From the IMG/VR virus record IMGVR_UViG_3300035698_018317, positions 124,001-188,000 of that record: DNA of 64,000 nt, one strand, 5' to 3'. Positions 3,215 through 56,351 of this stretch are shown in pieces (within the stretch, counting starts at the first letter, position 1; every line of letters begins with the position of its first letter). Position numbers and translations under genes: made by a program. Below the pieces are notes generated by a model that was not told the origin of the DNA, did not search any database, and worked only from the letters and a program-made list of their open reading frames with translations.

Positions 3215-3691
3215 ATGAAGGCACTCATTAAAGAAGGCAAACTAATAGGTACGTGTAGTGATGAAGACGCTGTTACGGCACTGGCTGATGGAACGGCAGA
3301 TTCAATACTAACTGTAGACCCCGCAGAAGTCGCCCAATTGTCAGGACGCCCTCTGACTCTCGGCCAAAGACTTCAAAGTAAAATCAACAGTATTGGTCGT
3401 GACTTAGATGAGAGTGCGACAGAACTTGTAAAAAAAGCACCGGGATTATGTGGTGCGGCAAAAGATAAAGTACTATCTTTCGCTGCGACAATTAAAAATA
3501 AAGGCGACGAAGCTTTGGCCCAGTTGCGTGTAGTTGCTCATGAACTGACGGCTCCTGAAGCTGAAGTCGAAGCTCCCGCTGAAGTTGAAGAAGCTCCTGT
3601 TGTTGAAGCTCCTGTTGAAGCACCCGCCGAAGAAGCTCCTGCCGCTGTTGAAGCGGTCGAAGTTGTAGAAGAGGAAATCCCCACAGAATGA
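3215..3691 (+). CDS. Hypothetical protein with acidic Ala/Glu/Pro-rich tail
   Basis: ORF track; overlaps next gene (ATGA). Confidence 0.75.
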   Translation: MKALIKEGKLIGTCSDEDAVTALADGTADSILTVDPAEVAQLSGRPLTLGQRLQSKINSIGRDLDESATELVKKAPGLCGAAKDKVLSFAATIKNKGDEALAQLRVVAHELTAPEAEVEAPAEVEEAPVVEAPVEAPAEEAPAAVEAVEVVEEEIPTE

Positions 3692-5031
3692 GTACATTAG
3701 TAGTAGAAGTTTGTAAAGTTAAGTCGGTAAGACCGCATCCAAATGCGGACAGATTGGCTATAGCTACGGTGAAAGCTTGGGAAACCTGCATTCAGTATGA
3801 CCCCGATACTAAGACAGCAGCGTTCAAGCCCGGAGAAAAGTGTATCTATTTCCCACCTGATTGCATTCTTCCTCCAGCACTAGCGAATAGTCCACATCAA
3901 GTATGCAAAACCAAAAATTGTAAAAATTACAATGTAGTTAAAAGTAAAGATTACAAAAATGGAATGTGCATATCTTGTGGGTTAACGATTAAGTTTATGG
4001 ATGTAACTCCGGGTAGACTCGGCGTAATGTCCTATTGTGCTGAATTGCCGAAACAAGCTGATGGAATTCGTAGCGAGGGTGGCCGTGTAAAAGCCACACG
4101 TTTGCGTGGTCGCCCTTCCTACGGGTTTATCATGAAGATTGATGAATCTAAGGGAGATGACCCATCTTGGAAAGTGGGTCAGGATGTAAAGGCTCATTTC
4201 AAAGTAAAGAAATGGGAACCACCTGAGAAGTCCACTGATGGAGATACAGCTACTCCTAATCCTCGTTTCCATAAATATACTGACATAGAAAATTACAATA
4301 ACTTTCCTGAAATCCTTACAGAAGGGGAAGAAGTAATTTTCACAGAAAAGATTCATGGAAAAAACTGTCGATTAGGTATGGTCTTAGATACGAATGAAAA
4401 AGGTGAAGCTGTATGGACGCCCATGTGCGGAAGTCATGCAGTAAGACGAAAGAAACATAGTCTCAAAAAAATCAAAAGAACGTTCTTGAAATCTGTGTTG
4501 GATTCTTTGAAATATGGAATAAGATTCAGAAAGCCTCCCAAATACACTATTGGCCCGATTTCAGAATTTTGGGGTTATATGACTCCAAAAATCGAAAAAA
4601 TGCTGGTTTGGTTAAGGGATGATTATGAGTGGGGAGAACCTATTTCCAGTATAATCCTGTTTGGAGAAATCTACGGGAAAGGCGTTCAAGATATGACCTA
4701 TGGCCACGCAAAACGTGGACTTAGATGTTTTGATATTGCTGTAAATAGGAAATACGTTAATTTTGAATTGAAAGAAAAATTCCTTAAGCAGTTTGAAGTA
4801 GAAATGGTTCCGATACTTTATCGTGGGCCGTTTACCAGAGAAATTCTTCAAAAACACGTCGATGGACCAACCACGATGTGTGCAAAGACATTGGCAGGGA
4901 AATTCTCTGGACGTGAAGGTGTGGTAATCACGCCTGTCAAAGAACGCCATAATCCTCAAGTAGGACGTGTTATTTTTAAGGCAATCTCCGCTGATTACCT
5001 TGCAAGAAAAAACCCCACTGACGGTCACTAA
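3688..5031 (+). CDS. ATP-dependent RNA ligase (Rnl2/DRB0094-like)
   Basis: N-terminal HPNADRL module; nucleotidyltransferase motifs TEKIHG, FGEIYG, FDI, REGVVI, KAISADYL. Confidence 0.9.
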   Translation: MSTLVVEVCKVKSVRPHPNADRLAIATVKAWETCIQYDPDTKTAAFKPGEKCIYFPPDCILPPALANSPHQVCKTKNCKNYNVVKSKDYKNGMCISCGLTIKFMDVTPGRLGVMSYCAELPKQADGIRSEGGRVKATRLRGRPSYGFIMKIDESKGDDPSWKVGQDVKAHFKVKKWEPPEKSTDGDTATPNPRFHKYTDIENYNNFPEILTEGEEVIFTEKIHGKNCRLGMVLDTNEKGEAVWTPMCGSHAVRRKKHSLKKIKRTFLKSVLDSLKYGIRFRKPPKYTIGPISEFWGYMTPKIEKMLVWLRDDYEWGEPISSIILFGEIYGKGVQDMTYGHAKRGLRCFDIAVNRKYVNFELKEKFLKQFEVEMVPILYRGPFTREILQKHVDGPTTMCAKTLAGKFSGREGVVITPVKERHNPQVGRVIFKAISADYLARKNPTDGH

Positions 5032-16139: not shown

Positions 16140-16414
16140 ACCCTTTTGAAAATCAATATCCTAATGCCGCAAAAAAATTCTTTCTACAATTGTTACCAGA
16201 GAATATAGCCCAAACTCATTGGAACATTATAGAAAGAATTTGTGATGATGTTCGTCATGAGAAAGATTACAAACAACTTGCTGCGATGTTAGTGGCAATG
16301 TATGAAGTCGGATTTATTCGTTCTATAGAGGAGCATAAAAAAGGGTTAGAAAATGCTGGGATAGAAGTAGAAATAACAGCCCCTACGCCCGCATTACCAA
16401 ATATTTTTAAGTAA
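16136..16414 (+). CDS. Hypothetical protein
   Basis: ORF track. Confidence 0.7.
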   Translation: MNPFENQYPNAAKKFFLQLLPENIAQTHWNIIERICDDVRHEKDYKQLAAMLVAMYEVGFIRSIEEHKKGLENAGIEVEITAPTPALPNIFK

Positions 16415-17123: not shown

Positions 17124-17546
17124 ATGTCTTTAATTGCACCAGTTGAGGGAGAGGCTAATCTACTAGGATATATGTTGGGAGAAACATCTGTTCCTGCTGG
17201 AGGTTTTTATTATCGTTTATATACCGACCCAACAACAGCCCCTACAGAAAATATTGTATTAGCAGATTTAACGGAAGTTACAGATTATTTGTATGCTCAA
17301 GTCCAGCTTACGCCTGCTAATTGGGATATTACTGAGGCTGCGGATATAACAACTGCTGAATATAACGCTACAATATCATTTAATTTTGGTGCGGCTGCAT
17401 CGGTTTACGGATATTATGTGACAAATAATGTTTTGGATGACCCAACTACCACGATATTATGGATTGAAAGATTCAATAACGCACCGTTCGAAATACCTTC
17501 AGGGGGCGGAACGATAGAAATTACGCCAAAAATTACGTTAGAATAG
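17124..17546 (+). CDS. Virion structural protein (beta-rich)
   Basis: YRLYT, VYGYYVT, ITPKITLE pattern typical of small tail structural proteins. Confidence 0.6.
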   Translation: MSLIAPVEGEANLLGYMLGETSVPAGGFYYRLYTDPTTAPTENIVLADLTEVTDYLYAQVQLTPANWDITEAADITTAEYNATISFNFGAAASVYGYYVTNNVLDDPTTTILWIERFNNAPFEIPSGGGTIEITPKITLE

Positions 17547-45538: not shown

Positions 45539-45682
45539 TACAATATATATAGTGATTCTAGTTCACAAAGAAAAACAAGTTTTTTCTTGTTTTTTCATTA
45601 AAAATATTCTATATTACTTACAGTGGTAGATACGCTACCGAAGATTGCAGCAAAAGGCTGCGTAGAAGAAGGAAAACAAAAT

Positions 45683-46612
45683 ATGTACGAAGAAAAAATT
45701 GCTAGTGCTATTGCGCTCATAGCGGAACACAACGAAGCCATTGGAAAAGATGACGATGGCAATCCAAATCCGGGGTATATAGACCCCACAGATTTCACAA
45801 CATGCTTAAAGGCATCAGGTGGAACTTCCGAAGAAAGACTTAAAGGGTTCTCTTATGAGGATATTTTAACCTGTCTTCCAAAAGTCAAAACACCATCTGG
45901 TATAGAGGCATTTCCTCGTGTTGTGGCTAAAGAAATTGCAAAAATATTTCGAGGTGGCGAAAAAGTTGAAAATCGTCCTATTAGTCGCAGAAGAACAGAA
46001 CGTATGACTTTAAGGGAATTAGTCGAGAGTTTCGACCCAGAAGAACACACATCTGCAATTGCCAAAAGACTTTATGAAATTTCCAACGGGCAAGCTTTTA
46101 TTGTATTTGAAAATGGTCGTGTTGTAGATGTAGACACCACCATGAAGCTACTGTTGGAAATTAAACAAGGTCATAAAGGAAGGGCAAACATAAAGGTAAA
46201 TGACAAAATAAAAAGAGTCCATAAAATAGGACAATTACCTGATAATTATGCTGTTGAAAACCCATTATACCCACGCCGTCCATTGCGACCCGACGGAACT
46301 TGTGACCAAACAGGACGCTCATGGGAAGGAGTTACTTTAGAAATAATGCAACTTGTTAGACTTGCAATAACAACAGGAGAATTAAAAGTAAACTTAGAAA
46401 TGGCCCATAATACATTGGATATGGCTATGGGTGAAGGTGCCGAAGAAAAGCTTAGAGATAGATATAGAGATGCTTCTGTTCTGTTCGATGAAAAACCAGA
46501 TGATAGACCTAAATTGAAAATTTCATTAAACGGAAACTCTAAAGGAAATCCTTTAAAAGAAGGTCGCCCCGTAAGATGGAAAAAAGAAGGCAATGCGTAT
46601 CGTTCACTATAA
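45683..46612 (+). CDS. Hypothetical protein (ATG start MYEEK preferred)
   Basis: AAGGA SD before 45683. Confidence 0.7.
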   Translation: MYEEKIASAIALIAEHNEAIGKDDDGNPNPGYIDPTDFTTCLKASGGTSEERLKGFSYEDILTCLPKVKTPSGIEAFPRVVAKEIAKIFRGGEKVENRPISRRRTERMTLRELVESFDPEEHTSAIAKRLYEISNGQAFIVFENGRVVDVDTTMKLLLEIKQGHKGRANIKVNDKIKRVHKIGQLPDNYAVENPLYPRRPLRPDGTCDQTGRSWEGVTLEIMQLVRLAITTGELKVNLEMAHNTLDMAMGEGAEEKLRDRYRDASVLFDEKPDDRPKLKISLNGNSKGNPLKEGRPVRWKKEGNAYRSL

Positions 46613-46630
46613 AACAATAAAGGATAAAAA

Positions 46631-47425
46631 ATGTCAAAAGAAAAAAAGAAATTATATGTAGCAATTGTGTTGGATAAGTCTGGTTCTATGTGGAAAACAA
46701 GAGAAGCTGCCATTATAGGATACAATGAACAAGTTCAACAGTTAAAAATAAATGAAGATGATTTAGAAACAGAAGTTTGTTTGGTAACGTTTAATGGACA
46801 AGTTTTTGAACATCTATGGTGCGTCCCTACTGATGACTTGACAGAAATAGGTGATGATGATTATAAACCATTGGGTGCCACGGCTCTGCGAGATGCCATG
46901 GGATATACAATCAAAAAACTCATGGACACTACAGACTACGAAGATGAAAATAATGCCTATCTCGTTATTGCCATTTCCGATGGTGATACCATGAGTGATA
47001 AACATTACAGTGTTGGTGCTTTAAAAGAATTAATCGAAGGCTGTCAAGCAACGAAACAATGGACGTTCACCCACATGGGATGTAATGAGAATTATCTGAA
47101 AGAAATGGCAAAAGAAACCGGAATTCCAGTGGCTAATTATGCTGCATGGGATAATACATCTCTTGATTCTACGAGGGGTGGAATGAAGAGAGCGACCGCA
47201 AGAACACAACTATATCGTAAAAGCATCGCTGGAGGGCAATGTTGTTCATCAAACTTTATGTCAGATGTGGACAACCAAGTTGCTGATTTCACGAAAGTAG
47301 ATGATATAGATTTAATCGCAAAGAATGTTGATGTTGCATCAATCCCAAAACCCTCAACGACAACTAAAGCTAGAACAGTTTTCTGCGAAGCTAAAGCTGT
47401 TGAGTGGCCCCAAGAAGATAATTAA
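46631..47425 (+). CDS. von Willebrand factor A domain protein
   Basis: MIDAS DKSGS, GATALRDAMG, ISDG. Confidence 0.9.
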   Translation: MSKEKKKLYVAIVLDKSGSMWKTREAAIIGYNEQVQQLKINEDDLETEVCLVTFNGQVFEHLWCVPTDDLTEIGDDDYKPLGATALRDAMGYTIKKLMDTTDYEDENNAYLVIAISDGDTMSDKHYSVGALKELIEGCQATKQWTFTHMGCNENYLKEMAKETGIPVANYAAWDNTSLDSTRGGMKRATARTQLYRKSIAGGQCCSSNFMSDVDNQVADFTKVDDIDLIAKNVDVASIPKPSTTTKARTVFCEAKAVEWPQEDN

Positions 47426-47857: not shown

Positions 47858-47868
47858 GTTGTATTTTT

Positions 47869-47957
47869 GGAAAATAGGCAGATATTGGCTTGCTGCGCTG
47901 GTTTGCTAAACCAGTTGGCCTGAAAGGGTCATGAGGGTTCGAATCCCTTGTTTTCCG
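47869..47957 (+). tRNA. trnS: tRNA-Ser(GCT)
   Basis: CTGGT-TT GCT AA-ACCAG; long variable arm; GGTTCGAATCC. Confidence 0.95.
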
Positions 47958-47960
47958 TTT

Positions 47961-48048
47961 GGAAAGTAGCCGAATATTGGTTTGTCGGGCTAGTTTCGAA
48001 AACTAGTTGGCCTTCGGGTCATAAGGGTTCGATTCCTCTTACTTTCCG
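47961..48048 (+). tRNA. trnS: tRNA-Ser(CGA)
   Basis: CTAGT-TT CGA AA-ACTAG; long variable arm. Confidence 0.95.
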
Positions 48049-48117
48049 TGGTGACGATTGCCAATGCAACGCTAGGTTGCATTAGTTTAAATAAATTTAA
48101 AAGTGAATATTGCCATC

Positions 48118-48189
48118 GGGCGGTTAACACTGTGGTCAGTGTGCTGGATTGAAGTCCCAGAAAAGTTGGTTCGATACCATCACCGCCCA
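48118..48189 (+). tRNA. Atypical tRNA, anticodon GAA (Phe-like)
   Basis: GGGCGGT/ACCGCCC acceptor; A31-C39 mismatch; loop TT GAA GT; T-stem mismatch. Confidence 0.7.
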
Positions 48190-48207
48190 TTTTATGTACA
48201 CTCCAAC

Positions 48208-48281
48208 GGTGGTTAGAGTGTGACGGTAGCACGGGTGAGCCTGAAACTCATCAAGAATGGGTTCGATTCCCATAACCACCA
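48208..48281 (+). tRNA. Atypical tRNA, loop CC TGA AA, short variable loop
   Basis: GGTGGTT/AACCACC acceptor; GTGAG/CTCAT stem; C at position 33. Confidence 0.65.
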
Positions 48282-48287
48282 TTAGTC

Positions 48288-48362
48288 GGAGCTTTGGTAC
48301 TGGTCTGGTGACAGTGTGCGCCTGAAGAGCGTAAAAGTTCGGTTCGATTCCGAAAGGCTCCA
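48288..48362 (+). tRNA. Atypical tRNA-Phe(GAA) with G37 and enlarged D-loop
   Basis: GGAGCTT/AGGCTCC; TGCGC-CT GAA GA-GCGTA. Confidence 0.75.
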
Positions 48363-48377
48363 TTTAGTTGTAAAAAC

Positions 48378-48450
48378 GCTGCGGTAGCTCAGTTGGTAGA
48401 GCACTAGACTGAAAATCTAGGTGTCGCTGGTTCGATTCCAGTCCGTAGCA
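48378..48450 (+). tRNA. trnF: tRNA-Phe(GAA), canonical
   Basis: AGCTCAGTTGGTAGAGC D-arm; CTAGA-CT GAA AA-TCTAG. Confidence 0.95.
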
Positions 48451-48452
48451 TT

Positions 48453-48600
48453 GGATATTCACATGGCGGAATATATTGTTTCATTGACCCTTGTTCTTTA
48501 TAGAAATGCAAATGGAACTACAAGGCACACGCAGCTTTCTTCGGGAAGTGTGACCTCCCAGCCGAGGTCTTGTCCGTTCAATTCGGACTGTGAATATCCT
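48453..48600 (+). ncRNA. 148-nt tRNA-like structured RNA
   Basis: 11-bp terminal helix GGATATTCACA/TGTGAATATCC next to T-arm GTCCG-TTCAATT-CGGAC; three further hairpins. Confidence 0.7.
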
Positions 48601-48604
48601 AAAC

Positions 48605-48686
48605 GGCAGTATTGAGCAATTGGCTGCTCCCCAGATTGTAAATCTGGCGTCGAAAGGCATTGAAGGTTCGAGTCCTTCTGCTGCCA
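48605..48686 (+). tRNA. trnY: tRNA-Tyr(GTA) copy 1
   Basis: CCAGA-TT GTA AA-TCTGG; long variable arm. Confidence 0.93.
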
Positions 48687-48689
48687 GTT

Positions 48690-48920
48690 ATGAGTAAGAA
48701 AGATGAAAATAAGCGTAGAGAATACCAAATGCAGAATTATTCCGTGTATTATTTTCCTATAACAGGAGAAGTAATGTGTTGCCCAAAAAAAAGAAGTGTA
48801 TTTGGCGAGTTGCACGACCACCACTATTACATAAATTATTGTACTGATTGTGGGCAGCGAGTAAAACTTTTTGTTGCTAAAAGAAAACGTGTAGTTTGTG
48901 AACGTTGTAAAAAAGATTAG
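48690..48920 (+). CDS. Small Zn-ribbon protein inside the tRNA cluster
   Basis: ATG 48690; CTDC and CERC pairs. Confidence 0.6.
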   Translation: MSKKDENKRREYQMQNYSVYYFPITGEVMCCPKKRSVFGELHDHHYYINYCTDCGQRVKLFVAKRKRVVCERCKKD

Positions 48921-48928
48921 TCTATTTC

Positions 48929-49010
48929 GGCAGTATTGAGCAATTGGCCGCTCAGCGGACTGTAAATCCGCCGCCTTCGGGCATTGAAGGTTCGAGTCCT
49001 TCTGCTGCCA
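48929..49010 (+). tRNA. trnY: tRNA-Tyr(GTA) copy 2
   Basis: GCGGA-CT GTA AA-TCCGC. Confidence 0.95.
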
Positions 49011-49016
49011 TTATTA

Positions 49017-49122
49017 GCCCCCGTGACGGAATTGGCAGACGTGCGAGTTTTAAGGGTTTAAGAACCCACTAAAAGAAACTCGTGTCCATACGGGCGTACA
49101 GGTTCGAGTCCTGTCGGGGGCA
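49017..49122 (+). tRNA. trnL: tRNA-Leu body with 22-nt insertion in the anticodon loop
   Basis: Leu-type D-arm and A73; 29-nt loop at 49049-49077 between CGAGT/ACTCG. Confidence 0.8.
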
Positions 49123-49344
49123 TTAAGATTCAAATTCTTTTTGAATCATCTCCATTACTTTGTTAAAATCTTTTTCACTAGTTGTTTTGGTTTGAACGTA
49201 TTCGGCAGCTTTATCTATAGTGAGACCGCCTGTGCGAATGCTATTTACCATCTTACTAGCTAATTTATTTAAATTTAATTCACCATAACCCCCAACAAGT
49301 GGTGGCATTAATCTTGATTCTAACCATGTGTTAAAAGTTTTCAT
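49123..49344 (-). CDS. Small putative head-internal protein (MKTFNTWLE), antisense within the tRNA cluster
   Basis: Start corrected to 49344; TAGATACA motif upstream. Confidence 0.65.
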   Translation of the reverse strand: MKTFNTWLESRLMPPLVGGYGELNLNKLASKMVNSIRTGGLTIDKAAEYVQTKTTSEKDFNKVMEMIQKEFES

Positions 49345-49357
49345 AATGTATCTATTC

Positions 49358-49442
49358 GCCCTAGTGACGGAATTGGCAGACGTGCTGGCCTTAAAAGCCG
49401 GTGTCAATATATGGCGTGCAGGTTCGAGTCCTGTCTAGGGTA
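49358..49442 (+). tRNA. trnL: tRNA-Leu(TAA)
   Basis: CTGGC-CT TAA AA-GCCGG. Confidence 0.92.
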
Positions 49443-49448
49443 TTTTCT

Positions 49449-49517
49449 GGGGACGTGGTGTGCAGAATGAAGTTAGGACTACACAAGGCTTATAGGTTCG
49501 AGTCCTATCACGGAACA
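49449..49517 (+). pseudogene. Degenerate tRNA remnant
   Basis: Intact T-arm ATAGG-TTCGAGT-CCTAT and 4-bp CGTG/CACG; no recognisable anticodon arm. Confidence 0.45.
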
Positions 49518-49522
49518 TCTCT

Positions 49523-49610
49523 GGAAAGCAGCCGAATATTGGTTTGTCGGGCTAGTTTTGAAAACTAGTTGGCCTCCGGGTCATAAGGGTTCGATTCCTC
49601 TTGCTTTCCT
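49523..49610 (+). tRNA. trnS: tRNA-Ser(TGA)
   Basis: CTAGT-TT TGA AA-ACTAG. Confidence 0.93.
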
Positions 49611-49613
49611 TTT

Positions 49614-49702
49614 GGATGGGAGCCGAATATTGGTTTGTCGGGCTAGTTTGGAAAACTAGTTGGCCTGAAAGGGTCATTAGGGTCCAATTCCCTACTCATC
49701 CG
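49614..49702 (+). tRNA. trnS: tRNA-Ser(GGA)
   Basis: CTAGT-TT GGA AA-ACTAG; T-loop variant TCCAATT. Confidence 0.88.
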
Positions 49703-49760
49703 TTCGAATAAAAATATAAAAATTATTCGAACCTTTACTATTATATAGTGGAGGTAAAAA

Positions 49761-50321
49761 ATGAAAGAAAATATTCTTAGATTAAGAAAAGAAGGAAAAT
49801 CATATGGAGAAATACAAAAAGAGCTAGGTTGTTCTAAAAGCACAATCTCATATCACTGTGGAGAAGGGCAGAGGGAAAAACAGGTTGAGAGGCAAAGGCA
49901 ATTCAGAAAAAACAATGTAATTACTAGAAGAATTGGTTCGTTTACACAAAACAGACCTAAAAAAAAGAACAAACAACCTAAATTTGAAAGAAGCGTAACT
50001 CAAAAAACACAAGAAAAAAGTTATGATTTCCAACGCAAACAAAAATGTTCTAAATTTAATTTCAAAGATGTATTAGAGCATTATGGAGAACAAACAACAT
50101 GTTACTTATCTGGAAGACTTATTGATTTATCAGAACCTAGAACTTATCATTTTGACCATATAATTCCGGTTTCAAAAGGAGGAGATTGTAGTTTTGAAAA
50201 CTTAGGAATTGTTCGTAAAGAAGCAAATAGGGCTAAAAGTGACCTATTAGTAGAAGAATTTATTGAGCTTTGTAAAGACATTCTCGAATACAATGGTTAT
50301 ACAGTAATTAAAAACGATTAA
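49761..50321 (+). CDS. HTH plus HNH homing endonuclease
   Basis: SYGEIQKELGCSKSTISYH; HFDHIIPVSKGG...N...N. Confidence 0.88.
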   Translation: MKENILRLRKEGKSYGEIQKELGCSKSTISYHCGEGQREKQVERQRQFRKNNVITRRIGSFTQNRPKKKNKQPKFERSVTQKTQEKSYDFQRKQKCSKFNFKDVLEHYGEQTTCYLSGRLIDLSEPRTYHFDHIIPVSKGGDCSFENLGIVRKEANRAKSDLLVEEFIELCKDILEYNGYTVIKND

Positions 50322-55585: not shown

Positions 55586-55691
55586 GGCTGAATGACGGAA
55601 TTGGCAGACGTGCGAGCTTTTAGGGTTTGAAAACCCATTAAAAGGTGCTCGTGTCCTTCGGGGCGTGTGGGTTCGAATCCCTCTTTGGCCA
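55586..55691 (+). tRNA. trnL: Second tRNA-Leu body with 22-nt anticodon-loop insertion
   Basis: 29-nt loop at 55618-55646 between CGAGC/GCTCG. Confidence 0.8.
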
Positions 55692-55705
55692 GTAAGGAAA
55701 TTGTT

Positions 55706-56164
55706 ATGTGGCGTGAAGAATACGACGAATACGATGATGATGGCTATCCTTATTATTATCATGATGGCCTTGGTTGTCGTTGTTATAAATATGACAGACC
55801 TCCTTATAATAAAAATTATAACGTGCCGTCTCATATTCATATAATGAACAAGAATGAGGCGAAAGTAATGCGTCGTCTCAAAAATGAAACTGGTTTATCT
55901 GAAGAGGGTATTCGAAAGATTAAGAAATATCGAATTATGCTTTCTGAAGCTCAAAAAGAAGGGCAAAAAGCCAAACGGACAAGGGTGCAAAAAGCTAGAG
56001 ATGAAGTAATGAAATGCGTTTGTCGTAAGCTTAAATTAGCCAAAGAACATCCTGTTACACAGAAAGCATATCGTGAAGAATGGGAACGGCGGCGAAAGGA
56101 ATATGATAATCGTCCTTGTTGTAATAGTAGTATTTATCTAGAATCACCAAAGGATGATAGATAA
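55706..56164 (+). CDS. Hypothetical basic protein (start corrected to MWREE)
   Basis: AAGGA SD; track start lies inside the tRNA. Confidence 0.65.
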   Translation: MWREEYDEYDDDGYPYYYHDGLGCRCYKYDRPPYNKNYNVPSHIHIMNKNEAKVMRRLKNETGLSEEGIRKIKKYRIMLSEAQKEGQKAKRTRVQKARDEVMKCVCRKLKLAKEHPVTQKAYREEWERRRKEYDNRPCCNSSIYLESPKDDR

Positions 56165-56169
56165 AATCC

Positions 56170-56253
56170 AGCCTCGTGACGGAATTGGCAGACGTTCGGG
56201 ACTTAAAATCCCGTGCCCTTCGGGGCGTGTGGGTTCGAGTCCCACCGAGGCTA
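56170..56253 (+). tRNA. trnL: tRNA-Leu(TAA) copy 2
   Basis: CGGGA-CT TAA AA-TCCCG. Confidence 0.95.
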
Positions 56254-56267
56254 TTTAGAAATAATCA

Positions 56268-56351
56268 GGCCGAGTGACGGAACTGGCAGACGTGCGGGGT
56301 TCAAATTCCCGTGTCCGAAAGGGCGTGTGGGTTCGAGTCCCACCTCGGCCA
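56268..56351 (+). tRNA. trnL: tRNA-Leu(CAA)
   Basis: CGGGG-TT CAA AT-TCCCG. Confidence 0.95.

What the first reader, a model, noticed from the sequence alone, without database searches (positions are those of the whole stretch)
48453..48600. 148-nt tRNA-like ncRNA embedded between tRNA-Phe and tRNA-Tyr
Seen: perfect 11-bp end-to-end helix (48453-63 with 48589-99) stacked on a T-arm with a 7-nt UUCAAUU loop. After the 5' strand comes TGGCGGAAT, as in Leu/Ser D-arms. Internal hairpins: CCTTGT/ACAAGG, CACAC/GTGTG capped by a C(UUCG)G loop, and a variable-arm-like ACCTC/GAGGT. There is no 7-nt anticodon loop. Established: T4 and T5 tRNA clusters carry stable non-tRNA species of unclear function. 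Inference: an RNase P/CCA-processed tRNA mimic (decoy or scaffold), or a heavily inserted tRNA.
Basis: partly seen in the sequence, partly recalled or inferred. Interest (0 to 1): 0.7.

Follow-up and report, generated by a model that had tools for sequence, protein, structure and literature searches.

The report
Anticodon-less tRNA-like RNA in phage array
A large salt-lake phage carries, in the middle of its tRNA gene row, a conserved tRNA-shaped RNA gene that has no anticodon, an over-long end helix and a folded 50-60-base insert of unknown function shared with sister genes, much like phage T4's unexplained 'species 1' RNA.

Summary
Window 48453-48600 (+) lies 2 nt after tRNA-Phe and 4 nt before tRNA-Tyr. 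It has a perfect 11-bp end helix stacked directly on a canonical T-arm, a cUUCGg-capped arm where the anticodon arm should be, and a variable-arm hairpin. ARAGORN and Rfam find no match.

It is a real, selected RNA gene. A sister phage (about 84-91% identical in the flanks) keeps it with only wobble or compensatory changes.

New here: the apparent D-loop insertion (48466-48532) is a conserved structured module. Homologous copies sit in two other tRNA-like chassis (L022:13202-13271, L045:18473-18546). Its 8-bp helix pairs in 32 of 32 cells, with double changes at five positions. A decayed copy lies at window 49443-49518.

Other relatives carry anticodon-less, class-II-like elements with 9-12-bp end helices. 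Ordinary tRNAs never extend by 3 bp or more (0 of 77).

T4 rnaC has the same kind of anatomy but no sequence similarity. tmRNA, Y RNA and an intron-bearing decoding tRNA were tested and rejected.

Best reading: a non-decoding tRNA-derived RNA cut out of the array by tRNA-processing enzymes, with a tRNA chassis that carries a functional module. No expression data exist, and its partner and role are unknown.

The parts
48453..48463 (+). 5' strand of the 11-bp end (acceptor-like) helix. G48453 is the likely mature 5' end, 2 nt after the tRNA-Phe discriminator.
   Evidence: The sister copy has C10>U, which keeps a U-G pair.
48464..48465 (+). UG linker, in the position of tRNA nucleotides 8-9.
   Evidence: The same UG occurs in L169:11733-34 and L022:13182-83.
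48466..48532 (+). Module arm in the D-arm position. It comprises a 3-bp closing stem (48466-68/48530-32), the 8-bp helix A (48478-85/48511-18), an apical hairpin (48494-97/48502-05), and the conserved strands CUUGU (48490-94), AAUGCA (48505-10) and UACAAGG (48519-25).
   Evidence: Alignment A5 and pair counts, covariance model R2 hits, helix A table.
48534..48549 (+). 16-nt hairpin in the anticodon-arm position: a 6-bp stem capped by a cUUCGg tetraloop (UUCG at 48540-43). There is no anticodon.
   Evidence: pair probability 0.97-0.98. It is identical in the sister copy.
48552..48569 (+). Variable-arm-like hairpin GACCUC/CCAGCC/GAGGUC.
   Evidence: The sister copy has a 7-bp stem with one inserted G-C pair and a C-G to U-G change.
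48572..48588 (+). T-arm: 5-bp stem and 7-nt loop UUCAAUU.
48589..48600 (+). 3' strand of the end helix (48589-99) plus an unpaired U48600 in the discriminator position. No CCA is encoded.
   Evidence: The sister copy has A142>G, which keeps a U-G pair.
48378..48450 (+). Upstream neighbour, tRNA-Phe(GAA).
48605..48686 (+). Downstream neighbour, tRNA-Tyr(GUA), class II (bacterial type).
49443..49518 (+). Decayed remnant of a second module-bearing tRNA-like gene, the homologue of L022:13174-13313. It keeps the module's 3' part and the T-arm and end-helix 3' strand. It has lost the 5' half and the variable arm.
   Evidence: Sequence compared with the L022 fold. BLAST synteny.

Best explanation
It is a gene for a non-decoding RNA derived from a class-II (Ser/Leu-like) tRNA. 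SHOWN: it occupies one slot of a tightly packed tRNA array in a roughly 0.5-Mb-class myovirus from salt-lake and marine metagenomes. It folds as a five-arm cloverleaf with an 11-bp end helix stacked on a canonical T-arm. The anticodon arm is replaced by a same-length hairpin with a cUUCGg cap. The D-arm carries a structured module of about 50 nt. The whole RNA is conserved in a sister phage, with only pair-preserving changes in its stems. The module recurs, with compensatory changes, in two other tRNA-like chassis. INFERRED: it is co-transcribed with the tRNAs. It is released by RNase P at G48453 and by 3' trimming after U48600. The tRNA-like chassis supplies processing signals, folding and stability. 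The long helix and pyrimidine discriminator keep it out of CCA addition, aminoacylation and EF-Tu binding, so it cannot act in decoding. The conserved module (helix A, apical hairpin, and the invariant CUUGU, AAUGCA and CUACA-GG strands) is the working surface that binds a still unknown protein or RNA. In short, it looks like a natural 'tRNA scaffold' carrying a payload, of the same kind as T4 species 1 RNA.
For: Anatomy and fold statistics. Not a tRNA, tmRNA or any Rfam family. Array spacing matches the 2-nt spacers between the neighbouring Ser tRNAs. Sister copies L015, L021 and L022 score 156.6 bits and give the same fold. Outside the variable hairpin they differ by 3 substitutions and 1 indel in about 126 nt, while the flanks are 75-91% identical. 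Indels totalling 5 nt rule out a coding role. Module homology and covariation: 7 pairs change on both sides, against 0-1 in slid controls. R2 finds L045:18473-18546 at E = 1e-4 inside a 124-nt tRNA-like gene. Helix A pairs in 32 of 32 cells, with double changes at 5 of 8 positions. The long end helix is a class feature: ordinary tRNAs extend by 3 bp or more in 0 of 77 cases, while the anticodon-less elements extend by 2 to 5 bp. T4 rnaC has a T-arm, an end helix, a large arm and no anticodon loop. The phage encodes its own CCA-adding-type nucleotidyltransferase and an RNA ligase.
Against: There is no expression evidence. No RNA run holds the element, and DNA runs add only identical copies. Only three independent module lineages and two close full-length copies are known, so the covariation statistics are thin. 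The module is absent from 34 related IMG/VR records and from pattern scans of IMG/VR and GTDB genomes. The L169 element, in the same Phe-to-Tyr slot, lacks the module, and the L045:13644-13748 element lacks any large insertion. The chassis may therefore matter in its own right. No binding partner was identified. The RNase P site and the lack of aminoacylation are inferred from general tRNA biochemistry.
Confidence: 0.55

Rival explanations
1. It is a tRNA-body decoy or sponge. The chassis itself is the active part. It mimics a class-II tRNA (elbow, long variable arm, acceptor-like helix) and so soaks up or blocks a host factor that attacks or binds tRNAs. That factor could be a defence nuclease, a nucleotidyltransferase toxin or a synthetase. 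Having no anticodon loop, the RNA would escape anticodon nucleases.
For: Anticodon-less class-II-like elements with over-long end helices recur in relatives both with and without the module: L169:11724-11861 in the same Phe-to-Tyr slot, L045:13644-13748 and L023:3131-3253. The array holds almost only Ser, Leu, Tyr and Phe tRNAs. tRNA-targeting defences, and phage tRNAs as counter-measures, are documented (PMC10264068, PMC11555353, PMC13056530, PMC12851939).
Against: No cognate defence or binding protein was identified. This reading does not explain why a specific structured module is conserved across three different chassis. Distribution among relatives is patchy.
Confidence: 0.2
2. It is an aminoacylated but non-decoding carrier. 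RNase P or trimming leaves the inner 7 bp (AUUCACA/UGUGAAU) with an A discriminator. CCA is then added, and SerRS or LeuRS, which do not read the anticodon, charge it. The aminoacyl group then serves a non-ribosomal transfer reaction.
For: The inner 7 bp are followed by A, and UG then sits at positions 8-9. The body is class II. The module-bearing relatives L022:13174-13313 and L045:18467-18590 have 8- and 7-bp stems with A discriminators. The phage has its own CCA-type enzyme.
Against: The extra 4 bp are perfect, are kept in the sister copy by wobble changes, and echo the 2-5-bp extensions in other elements, against 0 of 77 ordinary tRNAs with 3 bp or more. The 2-nt spacing to tRNA-Phe fits a 5' end at G48453. 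The D-loop carries a 50-nt insert that would disturb LeuRS or SerRS recognition. This is inference only.
Confidence: 0.07
3. It is a decaying tRNA duplicate with no function of its own.
For: tRNA arrays in these phages do hold decayed copies, such as window 49443-49518. The element is missing from several relatives.
Against: All five helices are perfect (31 of 31 pairs). Changes against the sister copy preserve pairing. Divergence is several-fold below that of the flanks. The module covaries across paralogues.
Confidence: 0.06
4. It is an intron-bearing or heavily inserted tRNA that becomes a decoding tRNA after processing.
For: Many true tRNA genes in this phage group carry 22-58-nt insertions in the anticodon loop. 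Removing nucleotides 21-67 of the element would leave a normal-looking class-II D-arm.
Against: No excision leaves a 7-nt anticodon loop. The arm in the anticodon position is a 16-nt cUUCGg hairpin in both copies. ARAGORN with introns allowed and Rfam's tRNA model both fail on it. The end helix is 11 bp. No splicing-endonuclease homologue lies in the 225 kb available.
Confidence: 0.04
5. It is a member of a known tRNA-like ncRNA family: a Y RNA (YrlA) partnered with a Ro protein, or a reduced tmRNA.
For: A conserved gene pair (329-aa protein plus vWA protein) lies just upstream, and Ro60 contains a vWA domain. tmRNA also joins an acceptor and T-arm to other domains.
Against: YrlA and tmRNA models do not hit the element. 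The RNA ends leave from the acceptor position, not from a Ro-binding stem. The 329-aa neighbour shows no TROVE or HEAT fold and no PDB match. There is no G3-U70 pair. The frame that starts at the GCA of the AAUGCA strand, a typical tmRNA resume codon, has no stop codon within the element (read by eye from the sequence).
Confidence: 0.02

Closest known systems
Phage T4 species 1 RNA (rnaC; NC_000866 70908-71046)
   Same: It lies at the end of a tRNA array. It is about 140 nt, has a canonical T-arm (loop UUCGAAU) next to a helix formed by the two ends, has a large extra arm and a second hairpin, and has no anticodon loop. The record annotates it as a small stable RNA; that its function is unknown is my recollection of the T4 literature.
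   Different: There is no detectable sequence similarity. T4's end helix is 7 bp with two U-U mismatches, not 11 perfect pairs. T4 has no counterpart of the CUUGU/AAUGCA/CUACA module. rnaD does not look tRNA-like at all.
Bacterial class-II tRNAs (Ser, Leu, Tyr)
   Same: Five-arm layout, a 3-bp D-stem, GAAU...GGCA D-loop strings, a long variable arm and a T-arm. The strings are similar to the phage's own tRNA-Ser and tRNA-Leu D-arms. R1 gives a weak hit on tRNA-Leu 56170-56253.
   Different: An 11-bp rather than 7-bp acceptor, no anticodon loop, a 50-nt module in the D-loop and a U discriminator. It is not found by ARAGORN or by RF00005.
tRNA-Sec and allo-tRNAs (13-bp acceptor/T stacks; own knowledge)
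   Same: A class-II body with a longer than normal acceptor/T-stem stack.
   Different: Those have 13 bp in total and a working anticodon. This element has 16 bp and no anticodon. RF01852 does not hit it.
Engineered 'tRNA scaffold' RNAs and viral tRNA-linked small RNAs (own knowledge)
   Same: A tRNA body is used to obtain processing and stability for an unrelated structured insert.
   Different: Those are synthetic or eukaryotic-viral. Here the insert sits in the D-arm position (or in the anticodon-arm position in the L022 paralogue), and the acceptor is lengthened.
YrlA (bacterial Y RNA) and the tmRNA tRNA-like domain
   Same: Non-decoding RNAs with a T-arm/D-loop elbow mimic.
   Different: The topology and partner genes differ, and no model matches (see the membership tests).

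Membership tests
tRNA (RF00005 / ARAGORN) | 7-bp acceptor stem (8 bp in His and Sec) directly stacked on a 5-bp T-stem | tested here: not met
   11 bp plus 5 bp. Ordinary tRNAs in these loci never extend by 3 bp or more (0 of 77).
tRNA (RF00005 / ARAGORN) | Anticodon arm with a 7-nt loop (U33, purine 37) | tested here: not met
   A 6-bp stem with a UUCG tetraloop at 48534-48549. The sister copy is the same.
tRNA (RF00005 / ARAGORN) | T-arm with a UUCRANY loop | tested here: met
   GUCCG/UUCAAUU/CGGAC at 48572-48588.
tRNA (RF00005 / ARAGORN) | Detected by the family model | tested here: not met
   No RF00005 or RF01852 hit up to E = 10, and no ARAGORN call with or without introns.
T4 species-1-like stable RNAs of phage tRNA arrays | Encoded inside or at the end of a tRNA array on the same strand | tested here: met
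T4 species-1-like stable RNAs of phage tRNA arrays | T-arm plus a helix formed by the two ends, and no anticodon loop | tested here: met
T4 species-1-like stable RNAs of phage tRNA arrays | Sequence or model homology to rnaC | tested here: not met
   R1 finds nothing at rnaC. The kinship is of kind, not of family.
T4 species-1-like stable RNAs of phage tRNA arrays | Accumulates as a discrete stable RNA processed by RNase P | not testable with these tools
   No RNA run holds the locus.
tmRNA | G3-U70 alanine identity pair, a tag reading frame with a stop, and detection by ARAGORN or Rfam | tested here: not met
   The third pair is A-U. The frame that starts at the GCA of the AAUGCA strand has no stop codon within the element (read by eye). 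There is no tmRNA call.
YrlA / Y RNA | RF02553 match, RNA ends in a Ro-binding stem, and an adjacent rsr (TROVE) gene | tested here: not met
   No RF02553 hit on the element. The ends are in the acceptor position. The neighbouring 329-aa protein has no TROVE signal by Pfam, atlas or fold search.
Intron-containing tRNA | Removing the insertion leaves a canonical cloverleaf with an anticodon | tested here: not met
   Only the D-arm becomes canonical, and no anticodon loop exists.
Small self-cleaving ribozymes next to phage tRNAs (e.g. HDV-like theta; PMC10879173) | Nested double-pseudoknot topology in which the first nucleotides pair internally, or a match to an Rfam ribozyme model | tested here: not met
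   The first 11 nt pair with the last 11. No ribozyme family matches up to E = 10. I did not check whether Rfam 15 holds a theta-specific model, so theta is excluded by topology alone.

The most novel reading that the evidence does not exclude
Huge phages of this clade use tRNA genes as expression cassettes for non-coding RNA payloads. A portable structured module of about 55 nt (helix A, apical hairpin, and invariant CUUGU, AAUGCA and CUACA-GG strands) has been placed in the D-arm or anticodon-arm position of different anticodon-less tRNA chassis. The lengthened acceptor helix serves to keep the product out of translation. The module would be a new protein- or tRNA-binding RNA motif, for example an anti-defence or host-takeover factor.
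Probability: 0.3. Interest if true: 0.75.

Novelty: new variant of a known kind. Interest (0 to 1): 0.58.

Why it matters
The stable non-tRNA species in phage tRNA clusters (T4 rnaC and rnaD) are, to my knowledge, still unexplained decades after their discovery. This locus shows that the kind is not a T4 oddity. A distant, uncultured large phage keeps an anticodon-less tRNA-shaped RNA under purifying selection. It also points to concrete features that can be tested: the over-long acceptor helix, the tetraloop in place of the anticodon, and a covarying module shared between paralogues. If the module proves to be a binding element, it would be a natural precedent for the tRNA-scaffold trick used in RNA engineering. 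It would also be a new player in the tRNA-centred arms race between phages and bacterial defences.

Tried and rejected
1. Rfam at gathering and at E up to 10, and ARAGORN with and without introns, found nothing on the element.
2. BLAST of the element against 50,697 phage records gave no match. Exact and anchored patterns in IMG/VR gave either nothing or chance matches without the fold.
3. The neighbouring 772-aa protein has no close relatives in IMG/VR. A tRNA-Tyr 20-mer led to an unrelated phage.
4. Sequencing runs are all salt-lake or marine DNA and add only identical copies. RNA runs hold only a tRNA-Phe-like fragment.
5. Ro/Y-RNA idea: the 329-aa neighbour was modelled (pLDDT 75) and searched against the PDB, with no TROVE fold and no hit below E = 1. 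Rejected.
6. Antisense-target idea: complementary matches of 11-14 nt in the 225-kb record are about twice to four times the expected number, and the single 14-mer lies in a region I took to be coding (not checked). Rejected.
7. Internal-promoter idea: no sigma-70-like site lies in the element. Rejected.
8. Short peptide or tmRNA-tag idea: frames of 14-15 codons start at the conserved AUG in all three lineages (read by eye). The reading frame across the conserved CUACA differs between lineages, and runs this long are expected by chance. Rejected.
9. The module pattern in IMG/VR and in 185,579 GTDB genomes gave only matches that fail the helices. Whole-record scans of 34 related IMG/VR phages gave none.
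10. More relatives of the L045 lineage were sought, but the long contigs had no DNA on file. The array's small zinc-ribbon ORF has no homologues.
11. An archaeal host with BHB splicing was considered. tRNA-Tyr is class II and terminators are of the bacterial type, and no EndA homologue is present. Rejected.

Full report
**Context.** The window is bases 124001-188000 of a 225-kb IMG/VR virus record that CheckV rates as 44% complete. Tail sheath, baseplate hub, ribonucleotide reductase, SbcCD-like and RNA ligase genes mark it as a large myovirus. Its sheath protein is under 40% identical to that of any isolate. Public runs that hold the locus are salt-lake and marine metagenomes. All 11 ARAGORN tRNAs of the record lie in the window. 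tRNA-Tyr is class II, and a hairpin-plus-T-run terminator precedes the array, so the host is bacterial.

**The observation.**
- An 11-bp perfect helix joins the two ends and abuts a 5-bp T-stem with loop UUCAAUU.
- The MFE fold is -47.4 kcal/mol, with z = -3.34 and 1 of 200 shuffles as good. It adds a 3-bp stem closing a large insert, a 6-bp hairpin capped by cUUCGg, and a 6-bp variable-arm hairpin.
- These helices have pair probabilities of 0.5 to 1.0.
- The unit starts 2 nt after the tRNA-Phe discriminator and ends 4 nt before tRNA-Tyr. The adjacent Ser-Ser pairs in the array use the same 2-nt spacing.
- Neither ARAGORN (tRNA, tmRNA, introns allowed) nor any of 4227 Rfam models matches it, even at E up to 10.

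**Layout.** Read as a cloverleaf, it has the five arms of a class-II tRNA:
- an acceptor-like helix of 11 bp;
- a UG linker;
- a 3-bp D-like stem whose loop begins GAAU and ends AAGGCACA, like the GAAUUGGCAGA of the phage's tRNA-Leu genes, but split by about 50 nt;
- a single A;
- a 16-nt hairpin where the 17-nt anticodon arm should be;
- a variable arm;
- a T-arm.

**Conservation.** Through the conserved vWA gene upstream I fetched syntenic loci.
- L015, L021 and L022 come from one sister lineage whose flanks are 75-91% identical to the window. They hold the element at 156.6 bits.
- The differences are C10>U and A142>G in the end helix, both giving U-G pairs. There is also one substitution and one inserted U in the unpaired parts of the insert.
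- The variable hairpin is remodelled and gains a G-C pair, so its stem is 7 bp.
- Outside that hairpin, divergence is about 3% in 126 nt. This is several-fold below the flanks.
- The indels exclude any reading frame.
- By contrast, window 49443-49518 is a visibly decayed copy of another gene of the same kind. That shows what neutral decay looks like in this array.

**The insert is a module.**
- Window 48466-48532 aligns end to end with L022:13202-13271. That stretch sits in the anticodon-arm position of a 140-nt class-II tRNA-like gene with an 8-bp acceptor. ARAGORN can call that gene only by assuming a 53-nt intron and an implausible AAG anticodon.
- On this alignment, 7 pairs change on both sides, against 0-1 when the partners are slid by 1-3 columns.
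- A covariance model of the module (R2) then found L045:18473-18546 at 30 bits and E = 1e-4. It lies inside a 124-nt tRNA-like gene with a 7-bp acceptor and a canonical T-arm, in a 424-kb contig.
- Across the three independent lineages, helix A (8 bp) pairs in 32 of 32 cells, with double changes at five positions. The apical hairpin keeps its place with wholly different sequences.
- The strands CUUGU, AAUG(N)CA and CUACA(N)GG stay constant.
Its outer pair is lost in the sister copy, it is imperfect in both paralogues, and its 5' strand is absent from the L023 element.
- The module was not found in 34 related IMG/VR records, in pattern scans of IMG/VR or GTDB genomes, or a second time in the phage's own record.

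**A wider class.** Descriptor scans of the tRNA arrays in relatives found further elements that lack a 7-nt anticodon loop, look class-II-like and have long end helices:
- L023:3131-3253 has a 10-bp end helix. Its D-stem covaries (GCC/GGC), and it shares the GAAU, AUGC and UAC-CAAGGCA strings.
- L169:11724-11861 lies in the same Phe-to-Tyr slot. It has the same UG-GCG...CGC-A frame, a 16-nt arm with a 6-nt loop and a large elaboration of the variable arm.
- L045:13644-13748 has 12 bp and a normal class-II D-arm.
- R1 does not detect these. I count them as architectural relatives, with homology plausible but not shown.
- As a control, 77 distinct ordinary tRNAs from the same loci extend their acceptor helix by 0 bp (67 cases), 1 bp (9) or 2 bp (1), and never by 3 bp or more.

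**Comparison with T4.** NC_000866 annotates rnaC ('small, stable RNA; species 1 RNA') and rnaD beside tRNA-Arg. Folded, rnaC shows a canonical T-arm next to an imperfect 7-bp end helix, one very large arm, a second hairpin and no anticodon loop. That is the same kind of object, but without sequence similarity. rnaD is not tRNA-like.

**Mechanism.**
- Shown: the fold, the position, the conservation, the module and its covariation.
- Inferred from general tRNA biochemistry: co-transcription with the array; RNase P cleavage at the base of the helix, as with the 8-bp stems of tRNA-His and tRNA-Sec; and exclusion from CCA addition, charging and EF-Tu binding, because the acceptor/T stack is 16 bp rather than 12 and the discriminator is U.
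- Because the same module rides in three different chassis, I favour 'chassis for processing and stability, module as the working surface'.
- Because module-less relatives keep the anticodon-less, long-helix chassis, a decoy role for the tRNA body itself is the main rival. That role would fit the known tRNA-centred conflicts between phages and bacterial defences (PMC10264068, PMC11555353, PMC13056530, PMC12851939).
- The phage also encodes a CCA-adding-type enzyme and an RNA ligase with an OB domain that is weakly tRNA-binding-like. I could not link either to the element.

**Limits.** There are no transcript data. Only three module lineages are known. Homologue searches were confined to loci that could be fetched. 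The partner and phenotype are unknown.

Noticed in passing
window 49017-49122 and 55586-55691; L015:3366-3461; L022:15748-15853, 16300-16405, 17415-17520; L045:15756-15878: Otherwise normal tRNA genes carry 22-58-nt insertions inside the anticodon loop. Each insertion has its own small hairpin and a stretch that can pair with the anticodon, as in pre-tRNA introns. ARAGORN calls them only with introns allowed. They are too short for group I introns, and no splicing-endonuclease homologue lies in the 225-kb record. How or whether they are removed in a bacterial host is unexplained and may deserve its own study.
   Followed up: partly
window 55586-55691 (homologue L022:15748-15853): A class-II tRNA whose loop begins UUUUAG, so ARAGORN reads anticodon UUA (ochre-suppressor type) in the L022 homologue; in the window copy I read this by eye, since ARAGORN does not call that gene. 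Stop-to-stop frames under the standard code already cover 91% of the record, and the longest ORFs barely grow if TAA is read through. There is thus no sign of genome-wide recoding.
   Followed up: partly
window 48118-48450: Four tRNA-like genes lie in a row. Three have a GAA (Phe) anticodon but divergent bodies (48118-48189 with an A-C mismatch in the anticodon stem, 48288-48362 and 48378-48450). The fourth, 48209-48280, is an odd 72-nt gene that ARAGORN calls Ser(UGA), with C at position 33.
   Followed up: no
window 47868-49703 and 55586-56351: The tRNA repertoire is limited to Phe, Leu, Ser and Tyr (plus Ile in the sister phage). These are mostly readers of UNN codons, and they include all three bacterial class-II tRNA types.
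   Followed up: no
window 49443-49518: Decayed remnant of the 140-nt module-bearing tRNA-like gene that is intact in L022:13174-13313. It sits in the same position, before a tRNA-Ser.
   Followed up: yes
window 3688-5031; G000:C1:30353-30886 (-): An RNA ligase (PF09414) with an N-terminal OB domain that weakly resembles tRNA-binding domains. Elsewhere in the record, a 523-aa ORF carries a CCA-adding/poly(A)-polymerase-family domain.
   Followed up: partly
window 48690-48920 and 49761-50321: A 76-aa zinc-ribbon ORF with no homologues lies between the two tRNA-Tyr genes. An HTH-HNH homing-endonuclease-like gene lies inside the tRNA region, which recalls segB in the T4 tRNA cluster.
   Followed up: partly
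L080:14295-14492: In a 244-kb phage only distantly related by its vWA gene, a 198-nt stretch has a perfect 10-bp end helix abutting a T-arm-like hairpin (loop UUUGAAU). Its interior folds poorly (z = -2.0).
   Followed up: partly
window 45623-47425: A gene pair (329-aa protein of unknown fold plus a 264-aa vWA protein) is conserved just upstream of the tRNA array across more than 100 metagenomic relatives. The 329-aa protein has no Pfam, atlas or PDB-fold match.
   Followed up: partly
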